Source of the DNA: Mytilus edulis
Lineage: Eukaryota
Direction: 5' to 3'
NCBI RefSeq assembly: GCF_963676685.1
Contig: NC_092348.1
Coordinates: forward strand, 80,848,001 to 80,912,000
DNA: 64,000 nt
A program made the position numbers and the translations under genes. Below the pieces are notes generated by a model, which did no database searches, was not told the DNA's origin, and was given only the letters and a program-made list of their open reading frames with translations. Each line of letters opens with the position of its first letter. Position 1 is the first letter of the stretch. This document shows positions 5,278-59,296 of this stretch, one piece after another.

Positions 5278-7412
5278 AATTCTGTCGGTGCTGGAATTTT
5301 TTTTTTTAAAAGGGCTTAGGGCTGTCCCTTAGGGGCGGACATAGTATTTTCTGGAACAGACATTATTTCATTAACACATGTTCAATTTAACAACAAATTT
5401 ATTTTTTAAATAAGAACGAAGGTTAATCATAAGTTATAAATAATTATATACTGTTGAAATTGTGTTAAATTTCTAACATACATCATCAAAATGTGTATAA
5501 TTGGCAAAGATACAAACATCTCAGTAACAACATAAAATAATTATGAATCTGCAGTTTATTATAGGACCAGCAATAGAAAAAATATTGATTATGTGTAAAC
5601 ACAGGATAATTTTTAAGAACTGCTGTAATTCATAAGTTGGGATCAATTTATTTTTTTGTATTATATAATTTATGATTTTTTTTTCAGAGATCTGAAACCA
5701 ACACAAGACCAGCTGGGTCAATATTCCTAATGCACCTCCAAATGAGGAACTAATGCGCCATCAAATGAGGAACACAAAAGTTGTGTGTAAACAAAAATTG
5801 TCTCTGTAGTGATATTGAACATGTTTCATTTTTAACAAGTGACTGAGCTTTACCATTTGTGTTGATCTGGAAAGTAGAGGATCATAGTATAAATATGTAA
5901 AAACTATGGAGTTTTTTAATGTATTCAAAGTTTTAAATTTTCAAAGAAATTGTTGTGTGAAAAAAAATCGCACTTCCCGAGAATTTAACCACATATATGT
6001 GAAAATGTCTTAGCTTCGAAACAAGCCATCCTACATATCCAGTGTACTATATTGACTGAGCTAGAGTAGAAAACATTACCAATACCAACTACGTGTATGC
6101 AGAAACAATTGTGCAAATTGCCCAGCTGATTAGAGGGCAGAAAACCAACATTTGGAATGACATGTACAATGTATACAACCAACACAAGACTAAAATTTGG
6201 AATAAAAATTAAAAATTCAGAAACAAACTATTTTTTTTTTATTGGTTCATGTAGCTACATGTACATTGTAAGAAAAAAGAAGTCTAAACTGTTGGATAGG
6301 TTTTGGTCTCTTGTGGACAGTTGTCTCATTGGCAATCATACCACATCTTCTTTTTTATACTCTCTCTAGTTGGTCAAAGGAAAAAAGCAATAGTTAGTTG
6401 AATTGAATTTCAGGTATTTGCTTCATTTGGGATATTTTTAGAAGTGTGTATGAATTGTGTAGAATATATATATATTTATAAACTAGACAGTCAGATTTTG
6501 GGCCGATTTTCCTAGCTTGTAATCGTGTAGTGAATCCAGCTGAATGCATTTTCAGTAAATATTAAGGTAAATATGGTAGTTTGTTGTATTTCTGAATAAT
6601 TCATTAAAAATGGTTTTCCGTCGTCAAAGTGAAACCTTCATTCTAGAATTTCTGCCATCATAGTGAAATCTGAGTTCTAGGCCACTGAAACACTAAACAT
6701 TCACAATTTGAAGCACTTACCAAGATGTCATGTTGAAGGCTGTACAAGTACCTATAATTGCTAACATCATCAATATTTGATTTTAGGATAGAGGGTTGTC
6801 TTATTGGCCATCATACAAAATTTCTTTTTTTGAAAAGTATTATGTGTTAAAAGAAAGAAAAGTTGCAAATTTGTTAAATGGAAATGTGTAATGCTTGTAC
6901 TTCAGTATTGCAAAAGTTAAAAACTTAAGACTTTATAAACCTTAAACAACTATTTTTGGGAAAACTAGACATTTATACATTTCACACTGAAACCTGCCAA
7001 AGATTAATAAAAACCAACTTTTTGACAATTTCATATACAGCTGGCAGTTTGGAAATAGAGTACATATAAACAATTGTCCATCTTTCCCACATAGAAAAAT
7101 TTACAACTAAAAACGGGTCAAAAGAAAAAATAAAGACCCTGTTTACATACTTCTTCAATGGAATTGCATTGATTTTATCAATTAAATGAGGACAAGGGAC
7201 ATTTATAGTTGTGCTGTGACGTTGTTACAACGTTTTATGATGGTAATAAATTACGTCACAAATTACGTTGTGCCAACGTTGTGTGGATGGTTGTCAGCAC
7301 GTGCCTTGGAGTTCACAAAATTACGTTGTACCAACGTAATTTTACTACGTTGTCACAACGATAGTATTACGTTGTCACAACGTAATGTCGACGTTGGATT
7401 GTTTACTGGGAT

Positions 7413-8068
7413 ACTATTCTGGTTCAGGAACACACGAGTTAAGCTTGAGTGAAGACAAAAACAATAAATCTGACCCTAGGAGTTCAAGATCATTGTCTCT
7501 GGGCGAATTTATTCAGGCTTTTGGTATTTATAAGAACATTATGTGTACAACATTTCCTCATCGTAGGAGTGAGCTGGATCTTTATGAACGTGATTTGGTT
7601 GATATGGCCACCAGGTATCCGGGTAAGGGATTTTACGAGTACCATAAACGGTTTTCTGCTGATGCGGCAGCTCATTTAAGGCATAACAATATTCCTGTTG
7701 ACTGGTCTATAAGAAATAACACTTTATTTTGCAATATTTTTGCGAACATTAAACCTAACACATGTAGCATTTGCGGTAGCACTTTTCACTCAAGTAGTTA
7801 TTGTAATCAGTCAAACAATAGCAACAGGAATACGACAGGGTCATACAGGTCAGATCAAGACATACACGGCAGGGAGCGTTCTTACCATGGAGGAAAGGAA
7901 ATCTGTAATAATTTCAACGGGAAAACAGGTTGTTTTAGACCTCATTGTAGAAATTTACATATTTGTCTAAGTTGTAATGGAGAGCACCCTAAAACAGTCT
8001 GTACGAGTTCAAAAAACGAGGCACTAGGACCCAACAAAATCGGGTCCAATATGCAGAGAAGAATGTAA
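7413..8068 (+). CDS. Ngaro ORF1 (gag-like), 3' part with zinc fingers
   Basis: CSICGSTFHSSSYC (CCHC), CNNFNGKTGCFRPHCRNLH (C3H) and CLSCNGEHPKTVC motifs; in frame with 825-1647. Confidence 0.85.
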
Positions 8069-9687
8069 ACGATCAAGTTTCCCTAAGTTTAGGAGTATCA
8101 ACACCCATTGTGATTAGTAATTTAGTTCATGAATTAGAAAATCATCCAAATAAGGAATTTAAGAATTACCTAGTTTCTGGGTTAATTCAAGGTTTTTCCA
8201 CAGGTATTACAACATTACCATCTAAGTCTATTGAGTGCAAAAACTTAAGATCAGCGTTATCTCAACCAACACACGTTTTAAAATTAATAGAGACGGAGGT
8301 AGAAAAGGGCTATTTAGAAGGACCATTTGATTTCATTCCATTTACACATTACCGCATTAACCCTATCGGTGTGGCAGAAGGTAAATACAATAAAAAGAAG
8401 CGTTTGATCGTAGACTTGTCAGCGCCTCATGAGGATCCAAAAAATCCTAGTTTAAACGAACTTATCGATAAAGATGAATTTTCTTTGCAATATGTTTCAA
8501 TTGATGATGCTATCAGAACTATCAAAAGCCTAGGTTTTAAATCTTGGCTTTTAAAAACCGATATAGCCGACGCCTTCAAGGTTATGCCCCTGTCGCCAAT
8601 GTTATGGCCGTTTCATGGAATCAAATGGGATGACAGATATTACTTTTTTAATAAATTGGTGTTTGGGTGCAGGTCTAGCCCAAAAATCTTTGACACTCTT
8701 TCACAAGCAATTTGTTGGATTGCTCAGAACAATTACAATATAGAGCACATTTTACACTTGTTAGATGATTTTCTAGTTATTGTACCAGAACAAGACAATG
8801 CTCAACAAACTATGAATACTTTTTTAGATATTTTTAAGTCATTAGGTGTGCCACTTTCATTTAAGAAAACTGAAGGACCATGTCATAAGTTAGAATATTT
8901 AGGGATATTTTTAGATACTATTAATATGGAGGCTTATCTCCCTTTAGAAAAGATTTTACGAATTCAAGAAATTATAGAATATTTCAGTAAGCGCAATTCG
9001 TGCACTAAAAGAGAGTTATTAAGTTTACTAGGGCATTTAAATTTTGCGTGCAGAGTTATAGTGCCAGGTAGATCATTTGTTTCACACTTAATTAAACTGT
9101 CTACTACTGTTAAAAAGTTGCATCACCATGTGCACTTAAAAAGTTGTAAACCTGATCTTGTTATGTGGTCAAAATTTTTAAAAGATTGGAATGGTGTTTC
9201 CTTCTTTTTAAATGATAATATAACGAATGCTGCTGACATTCACTTGTTTACTGATGCTACACCTTCCTCATTTGGAGGTTTTTATCAAAATGAATGGTTT
9301 CAAGGTGACTTTCCTTATGAACTATTGTCTTGTGAGCAAACATCTATGGCGTTTTTTGAATTGTATCCCATTGTAATGGCATGCGTACTGTGGGGAGATA
9401 GATGGAAAAGGAAACGTATATTATTCAATTGTGACAATTTAGCTACTGTTGATATTATTAAAAAGGGTAGATCTAAGATTCAAAGCTTGATGAAGTTAAT
9501 GAGAAAGCTCACTTATCATTCAGCAATTAATAATTTTGTAGTGCATGCCAAACACATTCCTGGTATAAAAAACTGTATAGCTGATTCTCTTTCTCGTTAC
9601 CAGATGATGAAGTTCAGAGCCTTGGCACCACATGCAAACGCGATACCAACTCCTTGTCTGCATCCCTCAGAGCTGATGATGGTTTGA
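7993..9687 (+). CDS. Ngaro ORF2 reverse transcriptase + RNase H (frame open from 7993, no ATG near the start)
   Basis: RT motifs KRLIVDLS, KTDIADAF, LVFGCRSSP, HLLDDF and YLGI; RNase H motifs FTDA, FELYP, NCDN and ADSLSR; uninterrupted. Confidence 0.95.
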   Translation, partial: NSLYEFKKRGTRTQQNRVQYAEKNVNDQVSLSLGVSTPIVISNLVHELENHPNKEFKNYLVSGLIQGFSTGITTLPSKSIECKNLRSALSQPTHVLKLIETEVEKGYLEGPFDFIPFTHYRINPIGVAEGKYNKKKRLIVDLSAPHEDPKNPSLNELIDKDEFSLQYVSIDDAIRTIKSLGFKSWLLKTDIADAFKVMPLSPMLWPFHGIKWDDRYYFFNKLVFGCRSSPKIFDTLSQAICWIAQNNYNIEHILHLLDDFLVIVPEQDNAQQTMNTFLDIFKSLGVPLSFKKTEGPCHKLEYLGIFLDTINMEAYLPLEKILRIQEIIEYFSKRNSCTKRELLSLLGHLNFACRVIVPGRSFVSHLIKLSTTVKKLHHHVHLKSCKPDLVMWSKFLKDWNGVSFFLNDNITNAADIHLFTDATPSSFGGFYQNEWFQGDFPYELLSCEQTSMAFFELYPIVMACVLWGDRWKRKRILFNCDNLATVDIIKKGRSKIQSLMKLMRKLTYHSAINNFVVHAKHIPGIKNCIADSLSRYQMMKFRALAPHANAIPTPCLHPSELMMV

Positions 9688-10661
9688 ATTTAAAAATAGA
9701 CGAATTATGGGATGCGTCTTTGAGCGAAAGCACTAGATTGACATATAAATCCGCTTTTAAATGTTTCAGAACTTTCCTGGTCATGAATGGTCAACCGTGC
9801 TCTGAAGTTAATCTTCCTTATGTAAAAGAAGATCTTCTAGTCTATTTCGTAACTTATTGTCAAAAAGCACTTAATCTGAAACACCAGACTATTAAACTCT
9901 ATCTTGCCGGAGTACGTCATTATTATATAAGATTTTTAGGATATGATCCTATGGCGAATGCTATCAGATTACCAGTTATTCTTCGGGGTATTAAAAAATC
10001 TCAGAACAATGTTGTTCAAGAAAGATTGCCAATTACATCATCAATTTTGAATAAGCTTTGTGCTTTATTATCGAAAGGAATATTTTCACCAGTGCTAGAC
10101 CTCATGTTTCAGTGTGCTTTTAAAATGGCATTTTTCGGTTTTCTTAGGTGTGGAGAATTTACCTGTCGGTCTTATAATGATAATTCATGTACAGTACTTT
10201 TGCAAGATATCACTGTGGATCCGACGAAACAGTTTTTCATTTTTCGCCTGCGATCATCTAAGCGTGATCCCTTTCGTCAAGGCGTGAATATTACTATTTA
10301 TGAAAATGACACATTTAAACCAGTGGATACAATGAGTAAGTATCTGTCTATAAGATATAACAATGGCGCTTTACCAAAATCTCCACTTTTTGTCGAGGAT
10401 GAATTTCAATCATCGCCGTTAAGCAGGGAAACATTTATTTCTTCATTGAGACAACTATTAGACATACTTGGCTATAATACTGTTAAGTTTTGTGGTCACT
10501 CCTTTCGTATAGGAGCAGCTACATCCGCAGCAGCATGTGGTGTCGAGGATCATATAATTCAAACATTAGGCAGGTGGTCATCAGACTGTTACATACGATA
10601 CATACGAACTGATGCCAAAGTATTGAAAAGAGCTCAGCACGATATGTGTTTTCATAACTAG
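9654..10661 (+). CDS. Ngaro ORF3 tyrosine recombinase (integrase)
   Basis: Catalytic signature R (GFLRCGE), K (SSKRD), HxxR (GHSFRIGAA), W (LGRW) and Y (YIRYIR). It overlaps the pol 3' end and the true start is uncertain. Confidence 0.95.
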   Translation: MSASLRADDGLNLKIDELWDASLSESTRLTYKSAFKCFRTFLVMNGQPCSEVNLPYVKEDLLVYFVTYCQKALNLKHQTIKLYLAGVRHYYIRFLGYDPMANAIRLPVILRGIKKSQNNVVQERLPITSSILNKLCALLSKGIFSPVLDLMFQCAFKMAFFGFLRCGEFTCRSYNDNSCTVLLQDITVDPTKQFFIFRLRSSKRDPFRQGVNITIYENDTFKPVDTMSKYLSIRYNNGALPKSPLFVEDEFQSSPLSRETFISSLRQLLDILGYNTVKFCGHSFRIGAATSAAACGVEDHIIQTLGRWSSDCYIRYIRTDAKVLKRAQHDMCFHN

Positions 10662-16992: not shown

Positions 16993-17355
16993 TTAGAACT
17001 TACGAAGACCTCCTCCTTGTCCGAACAAACCACCGTCCATCCCTCCACCAATACCACCGGCCAAATCTCCACCATAACCCCCGGCATATGGACCAGCCAT
17101 AGCGCCTCCATAAACTGGTAATGGTTGGTATTGTGTGATTTCGTCAACGTAACCTCCCTTCTTTCCATATCCGGAGTATCCATGATAACCACCTGATTTG
17201 CCGTATCCTTGATAACCTCCCATTCCGTATCCTTGATTACCATACCCGGACCATCCACCCTTCATGTATCCACCTCCATTGCCGTAACCATCAGCACTAA
17301 CACAGTTCAGGGCAAACAGACCCAAGACGGCGACAACGGCAAGTGTGGCTTTCAT
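16993..17355 (-). CDS. Secreted Gly/Tyr-rich protein, copy 1 (120 aa)
   Basis: Signal peptide MKATLAVVAVLGLFALNCVSA; the 99-aa mature part has 40 Gly and 14 Tyr. The acceptor TTTCAG|A lies immediately before the ATG. Confidence 0.9.
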   Translation of the reverse strand: MKATLAVVAVLGLFALNCVSADGYGNGGGYMKGGWSGYGNQGYGMGGYQGYGKSGGYHGYSGYGKKGGYVDEITQYQPLPVYGGAMAGPYAGGYGGDLAGGIGGGMDGGLFGQGGGLRKF

Positions 17356-32220: not shown

Positions 32221-32604
32221 CTAATATATCATTGATGAAAGCAAGAACTTACGGAGGCCTCCACCTTGTCCGAACAGACCACCGTCCATCCCTCCACCAA
32301 TACCACCGGCCAGTCCTCCACCATAACCACCGGCATATGGACCAGCCAGAGCGCCTCCATAAACTGGGAGCGGTTGGTTGTGTGTGATTTCGTCAACGTA
32401 GCCTCCCTTCTTTCCATATCCGGAGTATCCATGGTAACCACCTGATTTGCCATATCCTTGGTAACCTCCCATTCCGTATCCTTGATTACCATACCCGGAC
32501 CATCCACCCTTCATGTATCCACCTCCATTGCCGTAACCATCAGCACTAACACAGTTCAGAGCAAACAGACCCAAGACGGCGACAACGGCAAGTGTGGCTT
32601 TCAT
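32221..32604 (-). CDS. Secreted Gly/Tyr-rich protein, copy 2 (127 aa)
   Basis: Near-identical paralog ending GLRKFLLSSMIY. The true ATG is at 32604, after the CAG acceptor. Confidence 0.9.
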   Translation of the reverse strand: MKATLAVVAVLGLFALNCVSADGYGNGGGYMKGGWSGYGNQGYGMGGYQGYGKSGGYHGYSGYGKKGGYVDEITHNQPLPVYGGALAGPYAGGYGGGLAGGIGGGMDGGLFGQGGGLRKFLLSSMIY

Positions 32605-33776
32605 TCTGAAATTCAGAAATAACAATTTATTATATCATCAGATGAAATCATCAGAATGACATGCAACTCTAAACGATATTTCAACATGTTTTATAATAGA
32701 TTTTGAAAATTAAATCAACATATTCATTTTTCTAAATTGAAAAAAAAACTATTAAAATATGAAAAATTAATGATTAAATATAAATGATACCCCATTTTCA
32801 TTCTCAATTACCCAATTTTCATTCTCAAATTTCAATTTTTTTTTAATATTTAGCATTATAATTGATCTCTGTATAAACTTTACAAAAATAAACAACATGC
32901 ATATCAACAACGTACGAGTTTAATAGGCACACACTTTTCTTCATCATCGGTATTTTTTTAGTCAGTAAAAAATAATTCTCAATATTTAGAAAAAATTGTT
33001 TTATGATTGCAACATGAAATATAACAATACCGTCCTCTCAATCTCTGTTTTGTCTTAATCTCGCTTTTTCGTTCTCGCTTGTGTGTGTGTGTGTTTTTTG
33101 AGTTTTTTTTCTAGATTGCTATGTTGTGCGTCAACCTTTAACATTACCCCTTATTATATATATCATCTCCATTTTTAAATATTTCTTCTTAATTCATCTA
33201 TTTATTTCTATCATATTGCATATATTGAAAAATACAATTTCATTTGAATTATTTATATTTTTGAAAAAAATAATGATTTGAAGATCAACGATATTTTGAC
33301 ACATATTATGTTGTTGTTTTGCCTGAGGATTTATTTGTAGAACATGTTTAAACCTTTTTAATTCAAGAAAACAAAATATAAATATTTTGAAAAAAAATAA
33401 GAGCGACAATACAATGAGTTACTTATTCTAATTATGAATTGAAATTTTATGTAATGATTTGAAAAATGAATAATTTGAACATCAATGATATTTTGAAACA
33501 TATCATGTTGTTACTTAGCCTGTGGATTTATTTGTAGAACATGTTTAAATTCTTTTTAATTTCAGGAAAAAGTATGTAAATATTTTGAAAAAATAAGAAC
33601 GACCATACAATGAGTTCCTTATTCTAATTATGAATTCAAATTTTATATAAATATTTGAATGATTTTTTATTTCTATTTTTCCAGACAAAAAGTGAAGAAT
33701 AATTGAGTATATATATAAATATTTTGATGATTAAGTTATTTTTTAATTGTTATTACTACACCTTTAGTGGACTTAC

Positions 33777-40102: not shown

Positions 40103-40486
40103 CTAATATCTCATTGATGAAAACAAGAACTTACGGAGGCCTCCACCTTGTCCGAACAGACCACCGTCCATCCCTCCACCAATACCACCGGCCAAATCTC
40201 CACCATATCCACCGGCATATGGACCAGCAATAGCGCCTCCATAAACTGGGAGCGGTTGATAGTGTGTGATTTCGTCAACGTAACCTCCCTTCTTTCCATA
40301 TCCGGAGTATCCATGGTAACCACCTGATTTGCCATATCCTTGGTAACCTCCCATTCCGTATCCTTGATTACCATACCCGGACCATCCACCCTTCATGTAT
40401 CCACCTCCATTGCCGTAACCATCAGCACTCACACAGTTTAGGGCAAACAGACCCAAGACGGCGACAACGGCAAGTGTGGCTTTCAT
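40103..40486 (-). CDS. Secreted Gly/Tyr-rich protein, copy 3 (127 aa)
   Basis: Near-identical paralog ending GLRKFLFSSMRY; ATG at 40486 after the CAG acceptor. Confidence 0.9.
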   Translation of the reverse strand: MKATLAVVAVLGLFALNCVSADGYGNGGGYMKGGWSGYGNQGYGMGGYQGYGKSGGYHGYSGYGKKGGYVDEITHYQPLPVYGGAIAGPYAGGYGGDLAGGIGGGMDGGLFGQGGGLRKFLFSSMRY

Positions 40487-41101
40487 TCTGAAAATCAAAA
40501 ATTACCATCAAATTAAAAGTCATGCAACTTGTAAGGATATTTTATTTTTGCAACATAAAAACTATCAAAAACTGTCCCCTCCGTCTTTCTGTGTCGCTTA
40601 TGTTGTTAGTCGGACATTTTATTTCTTGGATAGCGGTGTTGTCTGCCTGCCTTTCAGATTTTCGCTTGTTATTTATTTCATGTTTTTTTTCACTATTTTC
40701 TCACTGGTTTAAATTGAAAAATATTACTCTAAACATCTTTATCTTTTTATCCTTTAAAATATACTTGAGAACTCAATTTTGTTTGAACTAATATTTTCTT
40801 CGAATTTTAAAAAGAACACAAAAACATCTTTGATAACATGACATTTCATGTTGCTGTTTAGCCCGAGGATTTATATATAGAACTTGTTAAAATACTTTTA
40901 ATTCTAGTAATATAATATATAAATATTGAAGAAAAAAATAAGAACGACTATACAATAAGTTTTTATTGTAATTTAAAAATGAAAATATTAAAAATTTTGA
41001 ATGATTATGAATTTACGTTTTTTTTCGAAATTTTGTTTGAATTGTTCATATGAAAAAAAAACCTTTGAAATGATTATTTACTAAAGCTGTCGTGGACTTA
41101 C

Positions 41102-50573: not shown

Positions 50574-51667
50574 AAACAAGAGTGCACACGCTGAAATGTC
50601 TCGCCTTCTATACTAATCATTGATATTATGTTGATAGTCCTAAGTATAAAGCTTTATTACAACTGTCTCATAAACTTAACATTAACCAAGATAACTAAAC
50701 AAAGAGCAATGAACCTTGAAAATGAGGTCAAGGTCAGATGAACCATGCCAGGCATACATGTACATCGAACAATGCTTCTATACAACATATATCGTTGACC
50801 TATTACTTATAGTTTAATAAAAATAGACCAAAACACAAAATCTTAACACTGTGCAATGAACCGTGAAAATGAGGTCATGGTCAAAAGAAACCTGCGCTAC
50901 TGACATAAAGATCGTAAAATATTTCCATACACCAAATATAGTTCACCTATGGCATATAGTATTAGATAAAAAGACCAAAACTCAAAAAACTTAACTTTGA
51001 CCACTGAACCATGAAAATGAGGTCAAGGTCACATGACATCTGCCCGGTACATGTACACCTTACAATCATTCCATACAACAAATATAGTAGACCTATTGCA
51101 TATAGTATGAAAAAAACAGACCAAAACACAAAAATTTAACTATAACCACTGAACCCTGAAAATGAGGTCAAGGTCAGATGACACCTGCCAGTTGGACATG
51201 TACACCTTACAGTCCTTCCATACACCGAATATACTAGCCCTGTTGCTTATAGTATCTGAGATATGGACTTGACCACCAAAACTTAACCTTGTTCACTGAT
51301 CCATGAAATGAGGTCGAGGTCAAGTGAAAACTGTCTAACAGACATGAGGACCTTGCAAGGTACGCACATATCAAATATAGTTATCCTATTACTTATAATA
51401 AGAGAGAATTCAACATTACAAAAAATCTTAACCTTTTTTTTCAAGTGGTCACTGAACCATGAAAATGAGGTCAAGGACATTGGACATGTGACTGACGGAA
51501 ACTTCGTAACATGAGGCATCTATATACAAAGTATGAAGCATCCAGGTCTTCCACCGTCTAAAATATGAAAGCTTTTAAGAAGTTAGCTTACGCCGCCGCC
51601 GCCGCCGCCGCATCACTATCCCTATGTCGATCTTTCTGCAACAAAAGTTGCAGGCTCGACAAAAAAC
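50574..51667 (-). mobile_element. HINE/Helentron-type element with ~150-bp tandem cores
   Basis: Repeated TGAACCATGAAAATGAGGTCAAGGTCA, (GCC)n microsatellite, hairpin CTGCAAC-AAAA-GTTGCAG and A-rich ends. Decayed relatives lie at about 60200-60840 and 63570-63965. Confidence 0.75.
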
Positions 51668-51708
51668 ACAACATTTATTGTACTTTATATTCCGAAATGT
51701 AGGAATGT

Positions 51709-54173
51709 TCAACAAAGTGTACATAGAGAAGAGGTTGTTTTCTTGTGCGATGCTTTGGTATCGTCTACCTTTTTATATTCCAGATCAAATAAAAGTAATA
51801 CGTCACTGCTATATGGTGGACTGTTTGCAACAATTAATTTATCCCCGGAGTGGTTCACAGCTATTGCTTGTGGACGACGAATTCCATCTTCTTTGTTGAG
51901 CAAAGTTTTAACAAATTTTCCATCTTTCGTTAGCACCTGAAACGAACAAGACTTAATTATTTCAAAGAAATCTTGTTGGCAAGATTAGATTTCATACCGG
52001 TAGCTTTCTTAAGGATGCGATATCGTCCAACAAGAAAAGTTCCCCAACTGTTGACCCTTTTTAAAGTTTTTAAAGTTAATGTGATTCTCACGTGTTTTTT
52101 TTCTCTTGGTTTGTGTAATCAAATCTGAATTACATTGGCAAGGTATTGTTGTCAATTACTGACTTCTTACAATAGGACGCCTATTCAGAATTTAACATAG
52201 AAATAAGAAGCTATTGTATGAATGCCAATAAGACAACTCTCCATTCAAGTCAGAATGTGAAAAAGGTATTCACTATAGACCAAAGTATGGTATTAAACAC
52301 GGATCCTCGTCTCACATTGAACAGCAAACTATAAAGGGCCCCAAAAGTACTAATATGAAACAGCATGAATTCTTTATTTTACAGTTCGACGCATATTTAG
52401 AATTAAACAGATAAGATTTTTTTCTATTTTGAAATGATTTCATTAACATTTTTGTCAGATAATTTTTTTTTCGGTTGGTTTTAATATTATTTCTAGTCTA
52501 GTTTTCAAAATAAGTTTGTACAAGAAAAGCTCTATTTAAATTGTTAGATCTGTGATCTGTATTCAGAAAAACTTGCAAGCTCCACATTTTTTCCCGTAAG
52601 CTCATTCGAATTTCTAACTATTGGATATTAGGAAATCAGTCGAAATGTTTTCGACCATTTTGACTAGGAGTGAATACAATAATTTGCAGTCTAGTGTTTT
52701 GGACCTATCAATGTGTTAGTTTGTTTTGTTTTGAAACGTTTTGCCAATACACTCTGACCGCTGCCAAAACCCTAGGTAAACATGGCAGGTCATATAATTA
52801 TCATTTTACGTTCGAATCTTTCTAAGCAGGAAAATGGGCCTTCTGTTCCTGTAATGTTTCGAAATATTTGCGGAGTTCTGTATATTTTGTTGATGATACC
52901 AGTAGCTGTGTGAAGAAATGTTATTATTTAAATCAATGAACATATCAAAGTATTTACTGATAGTCATTATTTTTTGTTAATATTAATTTACCTTTATTTC
53001 GTCCTCGCGCCAATCAGCTACACACACATGATTTCCAATAATATCGATGGCACGAGGCATTTGACAAGAATATTCCCATTTCTCCTGTCCATGACTTGAA
53101 ACACACTTTACACTACCGAAAACACCTGTTCCGTCACTGATGTAAATGTCTTCTAAGTTATCACTCAACTTGCAATACCATGGATCTTTGAACATGTTAC
53201 CTCGAAAACCGTCCTTCTTCCAAACACGGTGTTGATTTTTACCATTTGCATCTAAAACGGTCACATGTTTATCTAAATCGTCACCAGAGCATACAACAAA
53301 TTGACCATTACAATAATGGAGACCACGCAGAGCATTTGACACAGGCACTGCATGAGGAGTATATATTTTCCATTCTGCATTGTATGTTTTTTCAATTTTG
53401 ATTTTATTTGGATACACATGAAAAAATTTAATGTATCCAGCTTCAGTTGAAGCAATATAAGTTTGATGAATTAGGGTTAAGCCAAAAGGACGAACTTGGC
53501 ATATCTCCGACACAAACTTGCCTTCGCTTTCAAAAAGTTTTATCTTATAATTGCAGTTATCTGCCGCAACAATGCGGTCATCTTCCAAAAATATTAAGCT
53601 TGTTATAAAGGATGGCTCATCACCGTGGTCAGTTTTCAAATCAATGCTTCCTTTAAACTTTACTTTAATAATATAATTATCATAATTGATTTTAGAGGAT
53701 TGATCTGGAGTTTTGGAAGCGGATGGTCTTGTGTCTGGTTTGCGTTGCTTATTCTCTATTTCCGATAAAGAATGAGTTTTCGTTGCATTGAACAAATTAT
53801 GAAGTCTTGCACATTCCAAACAGAAATCCTCTACACATAACTTGCAATGTTTCACTGCTTTATGTCGTAAACCCCTTTCTTTACATATTTTGCAATAAAT
53901 GGGTTCAAAATTAGGAACAACAATATCCATAATGCTGACTACATGATGATTTGTTGGAAAGATGTCTACCCATTCAGAACGAGGTTTTTCTTCTGGAGCA
54001 AGCACACTCGTCCTACACATAGGACAGGAAAATTGTCCTTTATTTATCTGTGACATGATATGCGATTTTAAACAATCTCTACAAAATGTATGTAGACAAG
54101 GTAGACCCTTTGGGCTGGTAAAATAATCCGCACATATCGGACAAATTAATTCCTTCTCCACAGCTTGGGCCAT
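51709..54173 (-). CDS. TRIM-like E3 ligase A: RING - B-box - NHL/beta-propeller - CaaX, 469 aa; exons 54173-52992, 51936-51709
   Basis: C3HC4 RING (CPIC..CLHTFCRDC..CPMC), type-1 B-box (CKIC..CKLC..CLEC..H..H) and NHL-like repeats (RPFGL, DPWY, MPRAI, RPQAI). Phase-0 GT-AG intron; ends CTLC. The start codon is inferred. Confidence 0.85.
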
Positions 54174-56793
54174 ATCTATAATTCGACCACAGTATGAAAT
54201 TGAAACTCTCGGAAGGTCTTCCAAAGAAAAAGAAAGCCTCAACATGCCATATCTTCCATATTTTAAACACACATAAAACGTAAGCGTATGTATTCTATAG
54301 AGGAGTTTCGAATGAGAAATTTGTTAATGAAAGCACTGAACTCTAAACAAAAAAATAAACGATATCATGATAAAAGAAAACAATATGAAATATGTCTATT
54401 CAATTGTGTCGAAAAATATCAAATAACTTGAGTTATTATTTTACTAATTAACCCTTCAGTAATTTTATAAATGCATTTTAACTAGCTTTTTGTTTTTACT
54501 TTTTTCGTCAAATATCGGTGCTGATTTCTGCAAACTATTTGCACCACTAAGTAGCGGATCATGTCGATTGACTTTTCGTCTAGTTTTGGTTGGGATTGTT
54601 CATATTATTTCCTATTTTTAATCTCGAGTATCATTGAAATGACCACGGATTTGTAGATTTGTAAAGTAAACAAATACGAATCCTTGAATAGACATTAAAT
54701 TTCGAAATGCTCATCTGGTGCATTAAAATTGGTATGGTCTATATTGTTAATAATCATGCAACATACAATGCAGTTTTTTTCTTCTTTTGAATACTCAATT
54801 AGTATGTTTTGTATTACTTTATAAAATGTTTAAATTTGAAGTTATTTTGCAGTTTATAAGATATGTTACGTCTGTTCTCATTATGCCGAATCACAAAAAA
54901 AAAAGATGTACTATGGGAAAGAACGACGGATAATATTGGGTAAGGGCAAAGTATTAAAAAAAACATGTGGTATGATTGCCAATGAGACAACTCTCCACAA
55001 TAGATCAAAATGACACAGGAATTAATAACTATAGGTCACCGTACGGCCTTCAACAATGAACAAAGCCAATACCGCATAGTCAGCTATAAAAGGCGCCGAA
55101 ATGACATTGTAAAACAATTCAAACGAGAAAACTAATTAACGGCTTTATTTATGTACAAAAAATGAACGAAAACAAATAATATATGTAACACATAAACAGA
55201 CTGACTGATTACTGAATTACAGGCTCCTGACTTGGGAGAGGCACATACATACATAATGTCTCGGGGTTAAACATGTTAGCGGGTTTCCTTCACATATTCG
55301 TTTGATGTGATTATCGTTGATCATCTCGACGACATTGACTTTTTCGCGTGAGCCGGTAAGGTGGAAGTGAGAAAATCAATAGAGTTGAGATGACCAATAA
55401 TATCTACTTATCGCTAGTTTACCTATGACGACGTTGTCAAATTAATGTCAACCCTTGACAACGCCACGTGCCCCTTAGTTTCTAGCGATAATTTTCATAT
55501 CACTTGACTCCGCTGAGAAAGAAAATTATCAGACAGTAAGATCAAAGAGAAATTTCGTAAAGTAGCGATAATGACTGATAGATCCTGAATTAGTAAGTCA
55601 AAGATTCCATATATCTAAGTATGTACCGATTTTTATCATGTTCCTGGAATTGACAAGATTTTGGAATCGAAAGTCGGGAATGTAAACATTATATATAAAA
55701 AAAAACTCTATCCTGGTCTCCTGGTGGTATATTTTCGATTTCCCAAGCTTCACTTCAAATTTATTCTTCTCGAAAGTCCTTTTTTTTAGTTTTTAAATAT
55801 TTTATCAGGAAGCAAGACTACAGAGAATACATTTTTCTTCTTTGTTAGGAAGCGCAAAGACGATTATTTGACAGCCAAGAAAGTATTAAAACCAAAAAAG
55901 TTAAAGTGACATGTATATGACCAAACCAGGGTATTAATAAATTACCAAATCCATCTATGGTCAGTCTTGGAGGAGGGAGTGAAAACCATGAATATGTTAT
56001 TATGTTAATATGTGTTTGAAATGAGGTATATACATATTTTGATAATTATTAGAAGCAGGGGTTTTGAAAGATATTTCAATTCGCAAAACTTATTAATTTT
56101 TTGTTCAGATTAATATATCGACAAAATAAGACAACTGACCGTTCATCTCTTGTGTGTGTGTTTTTTTTACTCTCGAAGGATTTTTTTTCTACATGAATTG
56201 TGATGAGAATTTCGCGTACTGAAATGAAAATCATACAATAATGGGATGCTTTCAGAAAAGATAAAAAAAAACCCCAAACAAACAGTTAAAATTGCAGTTT
56301 AAGTGAGGCGAAAGATACAAAAGGGACCTTCAAATTCACAAGTCGAAAATAAACTGACGACGTCATGGCAAAGAAAACGGACCAAAAGACAACTGTATAC
56401 AAAACACAAGACTGAGAAATACGAACCCACAAAAAAACAAAAAAAACGGTGGTGATGCCAGGGGTACAGGATTGGTTAGCAGATTCTGCTCCACATATCG
56501 AACATCCGCTATTTTAGCAAAATATGCATGGGATTGGGGTTCTATGACTGAAGAATTTTTTTACACATCTCTCCTAACTCTTAGAAAAAGTTGGTGTATT
56601 TTTTTTACCCATTTCAATCAGCAAACACAATATTTTAATATATATAGTACAATAATAAATAACAAACTTTTTTTTTATTAACTAACAGGGACAGAAGTTT
56701 TTGTGACCAGTGTCCTATTAAAAACGCATTTGCAACACTATCTTTCTGAAACAATATATTATCTAACGATGCTGATTTTATCGTGTTACGTAA

Positions 56794-59296
56794 TTACGAA
56801 ATCGTACAAGTAGAACTCTTCTGCTTTTCTGGTTCCTTCTCAACAAACTTTCCATGGTATACTAAATCATATACTAAGATGTAGTCACTTTCATCTGGCG
56901 GACTTACACAGACGGCTAATTTACTTCCATCGGGGTTCACAGAAATAGCTTGTGGACGTCGAATCTTGTTCCGTCTGTTCAATAATGTCTGAATAAATCT
57001 GCCATTTCTCGAGAAAACCTAAGTGAAATAAAATTACAAAAAAGGTAAGGAAAAGTAAATAGCAAAAATACCGAACTCAGAGTAATTAAAAACTCGAAAC
57101 GGAAAGTCTTTAATTGAATGTCAAGATTAAAAGCTCAAACACACCAAACGAATGGATAACAACTGTCATAATCCTAAATGTGTACAAGCATTTTTCTAAT
57201 GTAGAAACTCTTCATGGTTTTTGGCATCAATTTGTCCATATCACAATGTGAGTATTTGCCGGGTGCTCGTCTAATCAGATGGTGCATATCACGTCTAACT
57301 ATCACCTACGTGGTATACATTATAGAGTCGTGCCTTTATTTGCAAAATAATTTGGTACCATCGGGTGCATCCACAATGTGATACGAATTTCGTTTTAGAG
57401 ATGTTATACATGTACGTTGCAATATTTAAAAAAATGACTTCTTATATATAAACTTGTGTCAGTTAAGTGCTTGAAATATATGGTGTAAATTCTAACATTA
57501 AAATTAAGCCTTTTGTATATCTTTTTGTGTTTTTCTTTCTTTTTTTTTGTTCAGTTTTTGTCTTGTCGTATACTTTTAATCTCATTCTATTATATCAATG
57601 TATAACCCCAAAAAAATGCGTAATATGCGAGACTACAGAAATGTCGTTCCATCATGAATACTAGGCAATTGCTTACTTCTACGTCGTTTAGTTTCTTGTA
57701 GAGAGTTGTCTCATATGGCATCCATACCACAAACATTTTTTTATTTTCATATGGAAATTACCTGTATCTTTTCTTCTCTGATATTAGCAACAAATATTTT
57801 ATTGCCACACAAGGCTACAGCACGAGGCGTATTTGCTGGCTGTTCCCATTTTGTCTCACCAGTGAGAATCGACACACATTTAATTTTGCCTAAAACAGCC
57901 GAGATCTCTGCCTGTGAATCGCGGTATAGCATCAGCCTCTTGTCAAATCCATCGCTTAAAACAATATTGTCATTGTCAACAAAAACAATGCTAGTTATGT
58001 TTCCTGGAGATTTTTCAGCAAAGTTCAAATCTAACCGTCTGTTAAATTTAGCCTCGATGTGAAATTGGTTTTGTCCTCTGTCCGATACTGATCTGTTGTC
58101 ATCTGACATATCGTCGATTGGGCGATGAATGTTGTATTTTATTTCGGCCTGCATGTGTTGTTTTGTTGCTTTGAAGCGTTTATGAAAATTAGAACATTCC
58201 TGACAGTAGTCTTCCTTACAAGTAACACATGTACGAACTGCCATTTGATTAACGTTCCTTGATTTACATGGGACACATGGCCGCCATTTGACGTCAGGAA
58301 AAACTTTCTCCATCAAACGGATCATCTGGTGGTTGTTTGGGAATTGGTCCACCCAATCTCGCCTGGCTTGGATCGGATCTGGTGGCATTATCATCATTCG
58401 ACATACTGGACAATTGAAATTGGATCCACGAACTGGAAACGAACGCTTAACAGTCAAAATATGACCCTTAAGACAAGTTCTGCAGAAAGAATGAAGACAT
58501 GGAAGGCCTTTGGGTGTCTTGTAGTAATCCTTGCATATTGGACATATAAATTCTTCTTTAACTTGTTTTCTTGACGATTTTCTATATGTTCTATTTCTTT
58601 TCTCAGGTGTTAACCCTCGTGGCGACGACGGACCGTGCAAACTGTAATATATTTGAACAGATTACTTAAAAATTAAACCACTCTTTTTTCATAAGGTAAC
58701 AAGTCGGTCTCTCTACTTTTAAACAAGACCAAGGGTCAAGCATTTAATTATTTAATTACTCATATCAACATGTTTCTACTTCTAGGCAGCCAGCAAGCCT
58801 TTTGCCTTTGTTTGCCTTGTGTGCTGTTAATTTTGTTCATTTATATGTTTTGCAGTTTAGTATGAGGTCCATGTTTACTGAACTGATACACATTTTTGTT
58901 TTTTGTTTAGGGACTACCGGAAGCCCGCCTTCGTGTGATGGATTTTCTCGCTGTGTTGAAGACCAATTGATGATTTTTAACGTGAACTTGAGTAAATAAA
59001 TACATGCAGTAAATTATTTAACCAACTTGTTATTCATTAATTTGTCAGTTATTCAGTTGGTCTGGGAGGGTGTTTGTTGTGAGACTAGTACTATATGTTT
59101 TATTCTATTTGTAGTTAAATGAAATGCAAAATATCCAAGCATAATATTAGCGGGAAGAGAACAAATGGTAGACTGCTTTTTAGCAATAATGTTCACATCT
59201 TAGTAATATAATACAAAAACAAATGTATTGAACAAATTTTGTGGATCAAAAAAATTTAAAAAAGAATACTTACTTTAATTTTGGAATGTTGTCCAT
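56794..59296 (-). CDS. TRIM-like E3 ligase B: RING - B-box - shortened NHL - CaaX, 375 aa; exons 59296-59274, 58641-57762, 57018-56794
   Basis: Paralog of A with the same last-intron position. The upstream micro-exon ATGGACAACATTCCAAAATTAAA|GTAAGT is phase-compatible with the acceptor at 58641. Ends CTIS. Confidence 0.8.

What the first reader, a model, noticed from the sequence alone, without database searches (positions are those of the whole stretch)
51709..59296. Tandem pair of coiled-coil-less TRIM-like ligases that both end in a CaaX prenylation box
Seen: after splicing, gene A ends ...KASHKKTTSSLCTLC* and gene B ends ...EKQKSSTCTIS*. Both are RING + single B-box + NHL propeller, with only a short low-complexity linker where TRIMs carry B-box2 and the coiled coil. 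The SSxCaaX tail and nearby lysines are kept although the paralogs are otherwise divergent. Established: Cys-a-a-X with X = S or C is a farnesyltransferase substrate, and upstream basic residues give Ras-like membrane targeting; canonical TRIM-NHL/TRIM56-type proteins dimerise through a coiled coil. Inference: this may be a lipid-anchored, membrane-targeted family of TRIM-like E3 ligases (possibly innate immune) in which membrane clustering replaces coiled-coil dimerisation. I do not know of this architecture being described.
Basis: partly seen in the sequence, partly recalled or inferred. Interest (0 to 1): 0.78.

Follow-up and report, generated by a model that had tools for sequence, protein, structure and literature searches.

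The report
Mussel RING ligases with lipid-anchor tails
Two neighbouring blue-mussel genes encode TRIM-like ubiquitin ligases without a coiled coil, and they and their relatives in oysters, pearl oysters and freshwater mussels all end in a lipid-attachment (CaaX) signal, which suggests a membrane-anchored ligase family that has not been studied.

Summary
Two minus-strand Mytilus edulis genes have GT-AG introns that spliced transcript contigs confirm. They match public models and end in CTLC (A, 469 aa) and CTIS (B, 375 aa). Both have a C3HC4 RING and one B-box1-type finger, followed 26-28 residues later by an NHL propeller, so there is no room for a coiled coil. Correction: B lacks about 125 residues of the propeller.

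The tail is not chance. A profile search found relatives of the same short build in Crassostrea, Pinctada, Sinanodonta and five unnamed sources. Each has a 20-39 residue tail with Cys at exactly -4. Position a2 is I, L or V in 13 of 13 lineages (CTLC, CTLY, CTIT, CTIS, CTIL, CSVS, CFVS, CSIL, CTIL, CVII, CVLL, CEIL, CVIS). None of 72 tail-less relatives and none of 26 own-genome paralogues show this.

CTIS (human GBP1) and CTIL (OAS1 p46) are proven prenylation signals.

Best reading: a small, old bivalve orthogroup of prenylated, endomembrane-anchored RING ligases. Lipidation itself is untested.

The scan has not noted this before. I found no paper describing it.

The parts
52992..54173 (-). 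Gene A, first coding exon (394 codons, starts MAQAVEKE). An in-frame upstream ATG lies at 54245. The transcript contig of X2 reaches 54345.
54015..54143 (-). Gene A RING finger (C3HC4, residues 11-53)
   Evidence: Pfam zf-RING_UBOX 5.4e-11 and zf-C3HC4 7.5e-10. All eight ligands are invariant in alignment A1. Coordinates.
53772..53894 (-). Gene A single B-box of type 1 spacing (residues 94-134)
   Evidence: Spacing pattern matched (pattern recalled). Weak Pfam ANCHR-like_BBOX match. Cys/His columns conserved.
52992..53693 (-). Gene A NHL propeller, part in the first coding exon (residues 161-394)
   Evidence: Family profile against PDB: TRIM2, TRIM3, Thin, TRIM71 and Brat NHL domains. Envelope.
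51937..52991 (-). Gene A intron (GT..AG, 1055 nt, phase 0)
   Evidence: Skipped in one contig each of runs X1 and X2
51781..51936 (-). Gene A last exon, part encoding the last propeller blade (residues 395-446)
51712..51780 (-). Gene A C-terminal tail of 23 residues. The CaaX box CTLC is at 51723-51712 and the stop at 51711-51709.
59274..59296 (-). Gene B exon 1 (ATG plus 20 nt; donor GTAAGT)
   Evidence: P0029 starts MDNIPKLN. The contig lengths fit three exons.
57762..58641 (-). Gene B exon 2: RING (58544-58401), B-box1 (58277-58155), and the propeller remnant from 58073
57019..57761 (-). Gene B last intron (GT..AG, phase 0)
   Evidence: In both X1 and X2, the loose end at 57020 reads the letters of exon 2
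56794..57018 (-). Gene B last exon: last blade, 22-residue tail, CaaX box CTIS at 56808-56797, stop at 56796-56794

Best explanation
Genes A and B are the two M. edulis members of a small, old bivalve family of RING-type ubiquitin-ligase-like proteins that descend from TRIM-NHL genes. The family kept the RING, one B-box of type 1 and the NHL propeller. It lost B-box2 and the coiled coil. It gained a flexible tail of 20-39 residues that ends in a CaaX box.

Inferred mechanism:
- The Cys at -4 is prenylated in the cytosol. It would be farnesylated where X is S, C or T (A, B, oyster, pearl oyster) and geranylgeranylated where X is L or I (the Sinanodonta-type clade and the B-like P0042).
- Because a2 is aliphatic, the last three residues are then cut off and the Cys is methylated.
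- This ties the propeller end of the protein to the cytosolic face of endomembranes (ER/Golgi type), because neither a strong basic patch nor a palmitoylatable second Cys accompanies it in A and B.
- There the propeller would bind a membrane-proximal target and the RING would recruit an E2.
- Gene B is a derived paralogue that lost about half of the propeller but kept the RING, the B-box and the anchor.

Shown here: gene structure, transcripts, domains, conservation of the motif, and the presence of the modifying machinery in the genome. Inferred: lipidation, membrane localisation, ligase activity and the target.
For: Gene models and splicing.

Domains.

Conservation of the motif:
- A orthologues end CTLC in 3 of 4 Mytilus species and CTLY in the fourth. 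Residues just upstream vary while SSLCTL does not.
- B orthologues end CTIS in 5 of 5 Mytilus species.
- Spliced transcripts of more distant relatives end CTIT (P0061, 59% identical to A) and CTIL (P0042, 77% identical to B).

Profile search of 1.84 billion representatives:
- Of the 148 new sequences among the best 150 hits, 16 have Cys at -4.
- Nine of those 16 are short RING-B-box-NHL proteins or fragments with a long tail: CSVS, CSIL, CTIL, CVII, CFVS, CVLL, CEIL, CVIS, CTIT.
- The named ones are Crassostrea virginica, Sinanodonta woodiana and Pinctada imbricata.
- a2 is I, L or V in 13 of 13 lineages.

Controls:
- None of 26 other TRIM-NHL-like paralogue ORFs of this genome has Cys at -4; they end right after the last blade.
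- None of the 72 tail-less rows in the tree set has a tail of 15 or more residues with Cys at -4.

Phylogeny on propeller columns only:
- The tail-bearing rows need 3 changes, against 12.3 in shuffles (0 of 500 shuffles as low).
- Two supported clades were found (SH-aLRT 94 and 99).
- One clade for all 13 rows is not rejected (p-AU 0.485).

Reciprocal search: clade-2 protein P0077 against this genome gives gene A and gene B as the best 2 of 56 hits.

Literature:
- CTIS is the prenylated CaaX of GBP1, and GFP-CTIS goes to the Golgi in an inhibitor-sensitive way (passages of PMC2998424).
- CTIL confers prenylation-dependent endomembrane targeting on OAS1 (passages of PMC7612834).
- CTIL and CVLL are fully geranylgeranylated by human GGTase-I. 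CTLM is a canonical, fully farnesylated sequence. An aliphatic a2 leads to cleavage and methylation (passages of PMC11152559).

Modifying machinery: ICMT and prenyltransferase alpha-subunit repeats are present in the genome.
Against: - No direct evidence of lipidation or membrane binding exists for any member.
- M. trossulus A ends CTLY, and I could not document that Tyr at X is accepted.
- CTLC, CTIT, CSVS, CFVS, CEIL and CVII were not found as tested sequences in the passages I read.
- The tails are not polybasic. One (P0077) has net charge -5, so membrane affinity may be weak.
- Two raw-read RNA runs (X21 with about 6% read, X24 with about 18% read) gave zero depth on both genes, so expression is low or restricted.
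- The kind of runs X1 and X2 is only guessed as RNA. Their contigs lack the intron, which is why I take them as transcripts.
- Five of the nine new family members come from unnamed sources.
- Only the best 150 of 13,579 hits were inspected.
- B's half propeller may not fold as a propeller.
Confidence: 0.72

Rival explanations
1. The conserved C-terminus is a different kind of signal that merely looks like a CaaX box. Candidates are a PDZ-domain ligand, a C-terminal degron, or a site for palmitoylation or metal/disulfide chemistry.
For: In the Mytilus/oyster clade, Thr or Ser sits at -3 in most members (CTLC, CTIS, CTIT, CTIL, CSVS), which resembles the S/T-x-hydrophobic pattern of class I PDZ ligands (pattern recalled). 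No lipidation data exist.
Against: - The last residue, which matters most for PDZ ligands, is the most variable position: C, Y, T, S, L, I.
- The S/T is replaced by V, E or F in CVII, CVLL, CEIL, CVIS and CFVS.
- The invariant features are those that define a CaaX box: Cys at exactly -4 despite tails of 20-39 residues, and I/L/V at a2 in 13 of 13 lineages.
- A palmitoyl, metal or disulfide site has no need to sit exactly four residues from the end.
Confidence: 0.08
2. The Cxxx ends are a neutral, lineage-specific accident of closely related sequences, and gene B is a decaying duplicate.
For: The Mytilus species are 94-99% identical, so identity among them says little. B has lost about 125 residues of its propeller. 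The two raw-read RNA runs show no reads on either gene.
Against: - The motif persists at 22-26% identity to A (38% in the oyster protein), in Crassostrea, Pinctada, Sinanodonta and unnamed sources.
- It is absent from 26 own-genome paralogues and from 72 tail-less relatives.
- B has an intact 375-codon frame in 5 of 5 Mytilus species.
- B has a 77%-identical spliced relative with the same deletion and a CaaX end.
- B is present in transcript contigs.
Confidence: 0.04
3. The proteins are prenylated, but the lipid serves mainly as a handle for protein-protein interaction or chaperoned trafficking (for example by a PDE6-delta-like carrier), or as a switch, and not as a stable membrane anchor that concentrates the ligase.
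For: The tails of A and B lack a second membrane signal (net charge +1, no further Cys), and a single farnesyl gives only weak membrane affinity (established knowledge, recalled). Prenylated FBXL2 is shuttled by PDE6-delta and needs palmitoylation for compartment choice (abstract of PMC9988375).
Against: GFP carrying only CTIS, and OAS1 p42 carrying only CTIL, do reach endomembranes. Members with X = L or I would carry the more hydrophobic geranylgeranyl group.
Confidence: 0.13

Closest known systems
TRIM-NHL ligases (TRIM2, TRIM3, TRIM71/LIN-41, Drosophila Brat and Thin)
   Same: An N-terminal C3HC4 RING closest to TRIM2/TRIM3 (1.1e-14) and a C-terminal NHL propeller matching TRIM2, TRIM3, Thin, TRIM71 and Brat (1.9e-11 to 1.5e-5) in a profile search of solved structures.
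   Different: - No B-box2 and no coiled coil: 26-28 residues lie between the single B-box and the propeller in A and B (7-71 across the family, mostly 20-30). Canonical relatives in the same search start their propeller at residue 340-620.
- A tail of 20-39 residues with a CaaX box, which the canonical relatives lack.
Expanded mollusc TRIM-NHL-like genes (annotated TRIM56-like, TRIM45-like, TRIM36-like and similar)
   Same: The same RING/B-box/NHL ancestry. They are the nearest sequence neighbours in the mussel genome and in the ESM Atlas.
   Different: They are about 560-700 residues long and present in hundreds of copies, and they end right after the last blade. None of 26 examined in this genome has Cys at -4. 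The CaaX family has two copies here.
Prenylated F-box proteins FBXL2 and FBXO10 (SCF substrate receptors)
   Same: Components of ubiquitin ligases that are brought to membranes by a C-terminal CaaX box (abstracts of PMC9988375 and bioRxiv 10.1101/2024.04.16.589745, seen).
   Different: They are F-box adaptors of cullin ligases, not RING proteins, and have no B-box or NHL domain. FBXL2 also needs two palmitoylated cysteines next to the CaaX box, which A and B lack.
Human GBP1 (CTIS) and OAS1 p46 (CTIL)
   Same: Their CaaX tetrapeptides are identical to those of gene B (CTIS) and of P0042 and P0075 (CTIL). In these human proteins the four residues suffice for prenylation-dependent endomembrane targeting.
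   Different: The folds and activities are unrelated (a GTPase and an oligoadenylate synthetase). GBP1 has a basic patch in front of its CaaX box, which is not matched here.
   Same: A RING ligase held at a membrane.
   Different: The anchor is a transmembrane segment or an N-terminal myristate, not a C-terminal isoprenoid.

Membership tests
TRIM / RBCC family | N-terminal RING finger | tested here: met
   Pfam zf-C3HC4 and zf-RING_UBOX, E 1e-10 to 5e-11, for both genes. The eight zinc ligands are invariant.
TRIM / RBCC family | B-box 2 (alone or after B-box 1) | tested here: not met
   Only one B-box is present, with type 1 spacing (pattern recalled). Pfam zf-B_box matched 3 of 15 family members at E <= 0.01, and ANCHR-like_BBOX matched 6 of 15.
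TRIM / RBCC family | Coiled coil of roughly 100 residues after the B-boxes | tested here: not met
   The linker from the last B-box His to the propeller is 26-28 residues in A and B and 7-71 across the family. No coiled-coil predictor or fold was available (structure prediction closed).
NHL-repeat beta-propeller | Six NHL blades recognisable by profile | tested here: met
   Gene A: the public protein scores 21.8 bits on Pfam NHL against a cut-off of 20, and family profile positions 210-443 align to Brat NHL 40-266. Gene B: only partly met, because the stretch matching A residues 226-349 is missing.
CaaX prenylation substrates | Cys exactly four residues from the C-terminus | tested here: met
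   Present in A and B, in all 9 Mytilus orthologues seen, and in 9 further relatives.
CaaX prenylation substrates | Aliphatic residue at a2, and an X residue from the set accepted by FTase or GGTase-I | tested here: met
   a2 is I, L or V in 13 of 13 lineages. X is S, C or T (FTase type) or L or I (GGTase-I type) in 12 of 13; Y in M. trossulus is uncertain. The rules come from passages of PMC11152559 and recall.
CaaX prenylation substrates | Flexible, exposed stretch in front of the Cys | tested here: inconclusive
   Tails of 20-39 residues beyond the profile's last blade, rich in K, S, T, D, E and Q. No disorder or structure prediction was possible.
CaaX prenylation substrates | Covalent isoprenoid on the Cys, followed by aaX cleavage and methylation | not testable with these tools
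   Only the presence of ICMT and of prenyltransferase alpha-subunit repeats in the genome could be shown.
RING E3 ubiquitin ligases | E2-dependent ubiquitin transfer | not testable with these tools
   Only the intact zinc ligands and the similarity to the TRIM2/3 RING were shown.

The most novel reading that the evidence does not exclude
Bivalves carry an ancient, low-copy orthogroup of prenylated TRIM-derived ligases, dating to at least the split of marine mussels and oysters from freshwater unionids. In this group a lipid anchor has taken over the job of the lost coiled coil: crowding on an endomembrane brings the RINGs together for activity. In mussels a half-propeller paralogue (gene B) pairs with or regulates the full-length one (gene A) on the same membrane. 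This would be the first known isoprenylated member of the TRIM lineage, and a natural test of whether TRIM ligases need their coiled coil or only proximity.
Probability: 0.2. Interest if true: 0.78.

Novelty: new variant of a known kind. Interest (0 to 1): 0.6.

Why it matters
TRIM ligases are thought to depend on their coiled coil for dimerisation, and through it for RING activity. The known ways of holding RING or TRIM ligases at membranes are transmembrane helices and N-terminal myristate.

This family has dropped the coiled coil. It has kept a canonical CaaX box from mussels to oysters and unionids, which adds C-terminal prenylation to that list. It also gives a simple model for asking whether membrane crowding can replace the coiled coil.

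The prediction is cheap to test, with tail fusions, a Cys-to-Ser change, or inhibitors. For bivalve genomics, it picks out a conserved, low-copy lineage among hundreds of expanded TRIM-like genes. The public records call these proteins 'uncharacterized' or 'TRIM35-like'.

Tried and rejected
- **Word search with A's last exon.** No candidates were found. The tool only sees proteins of 41-131 residues for that query, so the blank says nothing.
Cluster members gave spliced transcripts (P0061, P0042) that answered the question instead.
- **Structure prediction.** I used a profile search of solved structures and linker lengths instead. No coiled-coil or prenylation predictor was available.
- **FYVE domain in the Sinanodonta-type clade.** Rejected: the best score is 24.7 bits against a cut-off of 27.8, only the first two thirds of the model are covered, and the match lies on the B-box.
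- **PDZ-ligand reading.** Rejected as the main explanation (see rivals).
- **The alternative public model P0016** (609 aa, which splices out of the last exon before the tail into the downstream Gly-rich gene). The contigs of X1 and X2 show no such joint, so I take it as a fused annotation.
- **The seven further sequences with Cys at -4** (P0105, P0121, P0127, P0163, P0169, P0182, P0187). They were not counted as family members. They are 618-679 residues long with 2-5 residues after the propeller match (P0121 and P0169 gave no propeller match), and the Cys lies in the last strand.
- **ESM Atlas look-up.** It only returned the general mollusc and echinoderm TRIM-like clusters.
- **Literature.** Six searches listed no paper on a natural CaaX-bearing TRIM, NHL or RING ligase. 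Subscription journals are not covered. I opened no supplementary files, so per-sequence tables of the CXXX screens that may cover CTLC, CTIT or CTLY were not seen.
- **Immune role.** No test was possible, so nothing is claimed.

Full report
**What is there**

The window is a piece of a Mytilus edulis chromosome (G000:C5; identical public M. edulis proteins). Two genes lie head to tail on the minus strand between 51709 and 59296.

- Gene A starts at the ATG at 54173. An in-frame ATG at 54245 is used by the model P0012. The gene runs to 52992, has a GT..AG intron of 1055 nt in phase 0, and ends with the exon 51936-51709, which reads ...KASHKKTTSSLCTLC and stop.
- Gene B has a 23-nt first coding exon (59296-59274), a large exon (58641-57762) and a last exon (57018-56794) reading ...EKQKSSTCTIS and stop.
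- I searched the window's models exon by exon and left the joined step out. The joined products are already public, as P0012 (493 aa, carrying the 469-aa product) and P0029 (375 aa), and I used those records where a full-length protein was needed.

**Transcripts**

I laid four runs on window 51650-57649.

- In runs X1 and X2 (two studies, two organism labels; kind only guessed as RNA), one contig each (1485 and 1636 nt) covers the first coding exon of A. Each contig skips exactly 51935/7-52989/91 with CT..AC ends, which is GT..AG on the minus strand, and then runs through the stop to 51650/51655.
- Depth in these runs is zero in the bins 52450-52849 inside the intron. That fits transcript assemblies and not DNA.
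- For B, contigs of 1226 and 1221 nt cover 56721/56695-57020. They then carry on with letters that are those of the window just after 57762, so the predicted last intron is removed. Their lengths fit the three-exon model.
- No differences from the window fall in the tail-coding letters of either gene.
- No joint supports the fused public model P0016, which leaves the last exon before the tail.
- Against this, two raw-read RNA runs of 2026 (X21 with about 6% read, X24 with about 18% read) gave no reads on either gene. Expression is therefore low or restricted.

**Domains**

- Both genes have strong RING matches, and all eight zinc ligands are invariant among relatives.
- A single zinc finger follows. 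It has the spacing C-x2-C-x12-C-x2-C-x4-C-x2-C-x3-H-x8-H, which I recall as the B-box 1 pattern. Pfam sees it only weakly, as ANCHR-like_BBOX.
- NHL is below threshold exon by exon. It reaches 21.8 bits against a cut-off of 20 on the public full-length A protein.
- A profile of seven full-length relatives hits the RING of TRIM2/3 (1.1e-14) and the NHL domains of TRIM2, TRIM3, Thin, TRIM71 and Brat (1.9e-11 to 1.5e-5). It aligns over Brat residues 40-266.
- The stretch between the last B-box histidine and the propeller is 26-28 residues in A and B. Canonical relatives start their propeller at residue 340-620. There is no room for B-box 2 and a coiled coil.
- Correction to the finding: inside its one large exon, gene B lacks the stretch matching A residues 226-349. 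By my reading of the repeats, that is blades 2, 3 and most of blade 4. B therefore has only about half a propeller.

**Is the Cxxx end more than chance?**

Within Mytilus:
- A ends CTLC in M. edulis, M. galloprovincialis and M. californianus, and CTLY in M. trossulus. The residues just upstream vary (V/T, D/E, T/I, A/T, H/S/K, T/S) while SSLCTL does not.
- B ends CTIS in 5 of 5 species.
- These species are too close for this to weigh much.

More distant relatives:
- Cluster members from unnamed sources include spliced transcripts. P0061 is 59% identical to A and ends KKAKKSSTCTIT. P0042 is 77% identical to B, has the same propeller deletion, and ends VGKSCTIL.
- A profile search of 1.84 billion cluster representatives gave 13,579 hits at E <= 0.001. 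I inspected the 148 new sequences among the best 150.
- Sixteen of the 148 have Cys at -4. Nine of those are proteins of 425-524 residues, or fragments, with the same short build and a long tail: CSVS (Crassostrea virginica), CSIL (Sinanodonta woodiana), CFVS (Pinctada imbricata, a fused annotation), CTIL, CVII, CVLL, CEIL, CVIS and CTIT (the last exon of P0061).
- The other seven are proteins of 618-679 residues. Their Cys sits in the last propeller strand, with 2-5 residues after the propeller match (P0121 and P0169 gave no propeller match). I did not count them.
- Over all lineages, a2 is I, L or V in 13 of 13. X is S, C, T, L or I in 12 of 13.

Controls:
- None of 26 other TRIM-NHL-like paralogue frames of this genome has Cys at -4. 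They stop right after the last blade. Of 28 such loci, 26 were found again by tblastn.
- None of the 72 tail-less rows of the tree set has a tail of 15 or more residues with Cys at -4.

**One family?**

I built a tree on propeller columns only, leaving the tails out. It had 85 rows. Rows dropped beforehand were near-identical Mytilus duplicates, proteins over 1000 residues, and rows with an incomplete propeller match. The last group includes the genomic fragments P0002-4 and P0011, and also P0084 and P0174.

- The 13 tail-bearing rows fall into three places:
  - a clade of Mytilus A, B, P0061 and the oyster protein (SH-aLRT 94);
  - a clade of the Sinanodonta protein with P0075, P0077, P0090 and P0106 (SH-aLRT 99);
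  - P0107 alone.
- This needs 3 changes, against 12.3 in shuffles, and 0 of 500 shuffles were as low. The backbone is unresolved.
- Holding all 13 rows together costs no likelihood (p-AU 0.485). One origin is therefore compatible but not shown.
- Searching this genome with P0077 from the second clade returns gene A (4.2e-27) and gene B (1.8e-23) as the best 2 of 56 hits at E <= 1e-10 (89 of 797 candidates were scored).
- A's last exon finds only A and B at E <= 1e-10.
- The mussel therefore has two members of this lineage, against hundreds of canonical TRIM-NHL-like genes. Earlier notes of this scan describe such arrays elsewhere in the genome.
- The pair lies on the same contig or chromosome in five Mytilus species, judged from equal contig lengths and neighbouring accession numbers.

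**How it most likely works**

- A Cys four residues from the end, followed by any residue, an aliphatic residue and S, C, T, L or I, at the end of a flexible tail, is the signature of CaaX prenylation.
- Two of the tetrapeptides are proven signals.
  - CTIS is the CaaX box of human GBP1, which incorporates labelled mevalonate. GFP-CTIS goes to the Golgi, and prenylation inhibitors abolish this (passages of PMC2998424).
  - CTIL makes OAS1 p46, and p42 when appended to it, localise to perinuclear endomembranes (passages of PMC7612834). Human GGTase-I geranylgeranylates it completely, as it does CVLL (passages of PMC11152559).
- The same paper states three further points. GGTase-I takes CaaL/I/M sequences. 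An aliphatic a2 leads on to cleavage of aaX and to methylation. CTLM is a canonical, fully farnesylated sequence.
- ICMT and prenyltransferase alpha-subunit repeats are present in the mussel genome.
- I infer that A and B are farnesylated and processed, and that they sit on the cytosolic face of endomembranes.
- I expect endomembranes and not the plasma membrane for two reasons. The 15 residues before the Cys have a net charge of only +1 in A and B (range -5 to +3 in the family). A and B also have no second Cys in the tail.
- From that position, the propeller would bind a target near the membrane and the RING would recruit an E2.
- Three ideas remain untested: that crowding on a membrane replaces the lost coiled coil for RING pairing, that B acts with A, and that the family has an immune role. 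The low copy number and slow change of the family speak, if anything, against a diversifying receptor role.

**Comparison and novelty**

- These proteins work like TRIM-NHL ligases at the two ends. They fail two defining TRIM features, B-box 2 and the coiled coil, so I call them TRIM-derived and not TRIM.
- Prenylated ligase components are known, but they are F-box adaptors: FBXL2 and FBXO10 (abstracts).
- From recall, membrane-held RING or TRIM ligases use transmembrane helices or N-myristate.
- Six literature searches listed no natural CaaX-bearing TRIM, NHL or RING ligase. The library lacks most subscription journals, and I opened no supplements.
- The proteins are public, but they are labelled 'uncharacterized' or 'TRIM35-like'.
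- I rate this a new variant of a known kind.

**Limits**

- No lipidation, localisation or activity data exist for any member.
- No structure prediction was possible.
- M. trossulus A ends CTLY.
- Five family members come from unnamed sources.
- Only the best 150 hits were read.
- The kind of runs X1 and X2 is a guess.

Noticed in passing
window 57762-58073 (gene B) compared with 52992-53693 (gene A): Gene B lacks about 125 residues of the propeller (A residues 226-349) inside one continuous exon. Even so, the truncated form is intact in five Mytilus species and in a 77%-identical relative (P0042). A conserved half propeller with a RING and a CaaX anchor remains unexplained.
   Followed up: partly
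P0105, P0121, P0169, P0182 (hits; P0105 is named TRIM56 of Mytilus coruscus): A subgroup of canonical TRIM-NHL-like proteins of about 640 residues ends with C-E-[I/F]-x inside the last propeller strand (for example CEIS). Cys is thus at -4 without any tail. It may be a chance strand motif or a cryptic CaaX box; this was not resolved.
   Followed up: no
P0017 (M. trossulus orthologue of gene A): It ends CTLY instead of CTLC. This needs one G-to-A change in the last codon. Whether it is a fixed difference, a polymorphism or an error is unknown.
   Followed up: no
P0016 (M. edulis) and P0084 (Pinctada imbricata): These public models look like fusions. P0016 joins gene A, before its tail, to the downstream Gly/Tyr-rich gene. 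P0084 joins a ribosomal protein bL17m piece to the last third of a family member. The fusion also pulled the Gly-rich proteins P0014, P0020 and P0025 into gene A's 90% cluster.
   Followed up: partly
window 16993-17355, 32221-32625, 40103-40498 (minus strand): Three near-identical ORFs encode a secreted-looking Gly/Tyr-rich protein that starts MKATLAVVAVLGLFALNCVSADGYGNGGGY. This is a tandem gene family downstream of gene A.
   Followed up: no
window 54850-55250 and 57050-57250: Short repeats in the A-B spacer and in B's last intron have summed depths in the thousands in the contigs of X1 and X2, and tens of reads in the raw RNA runs, with many loose ends. These are abundant transcribed dispersed repeats.
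   Followed up: no
P0072, P0106, P0090 (clade-2 relatives), residues about 86-149: The single B-box gives sub-threshold FYVE / FYVE_2 matches (best 24.7 bits against a cut-off of 27.8). I read this as a zinc-finger cross-match and not as a lipid-binding FYVE domain.
   Followed up: yes
window 7385-10661 (plus strand): These ORFs look like a retroelement with a reverse transcriptase and a tyrosine-recombinase-like protein.
   Followed up: no
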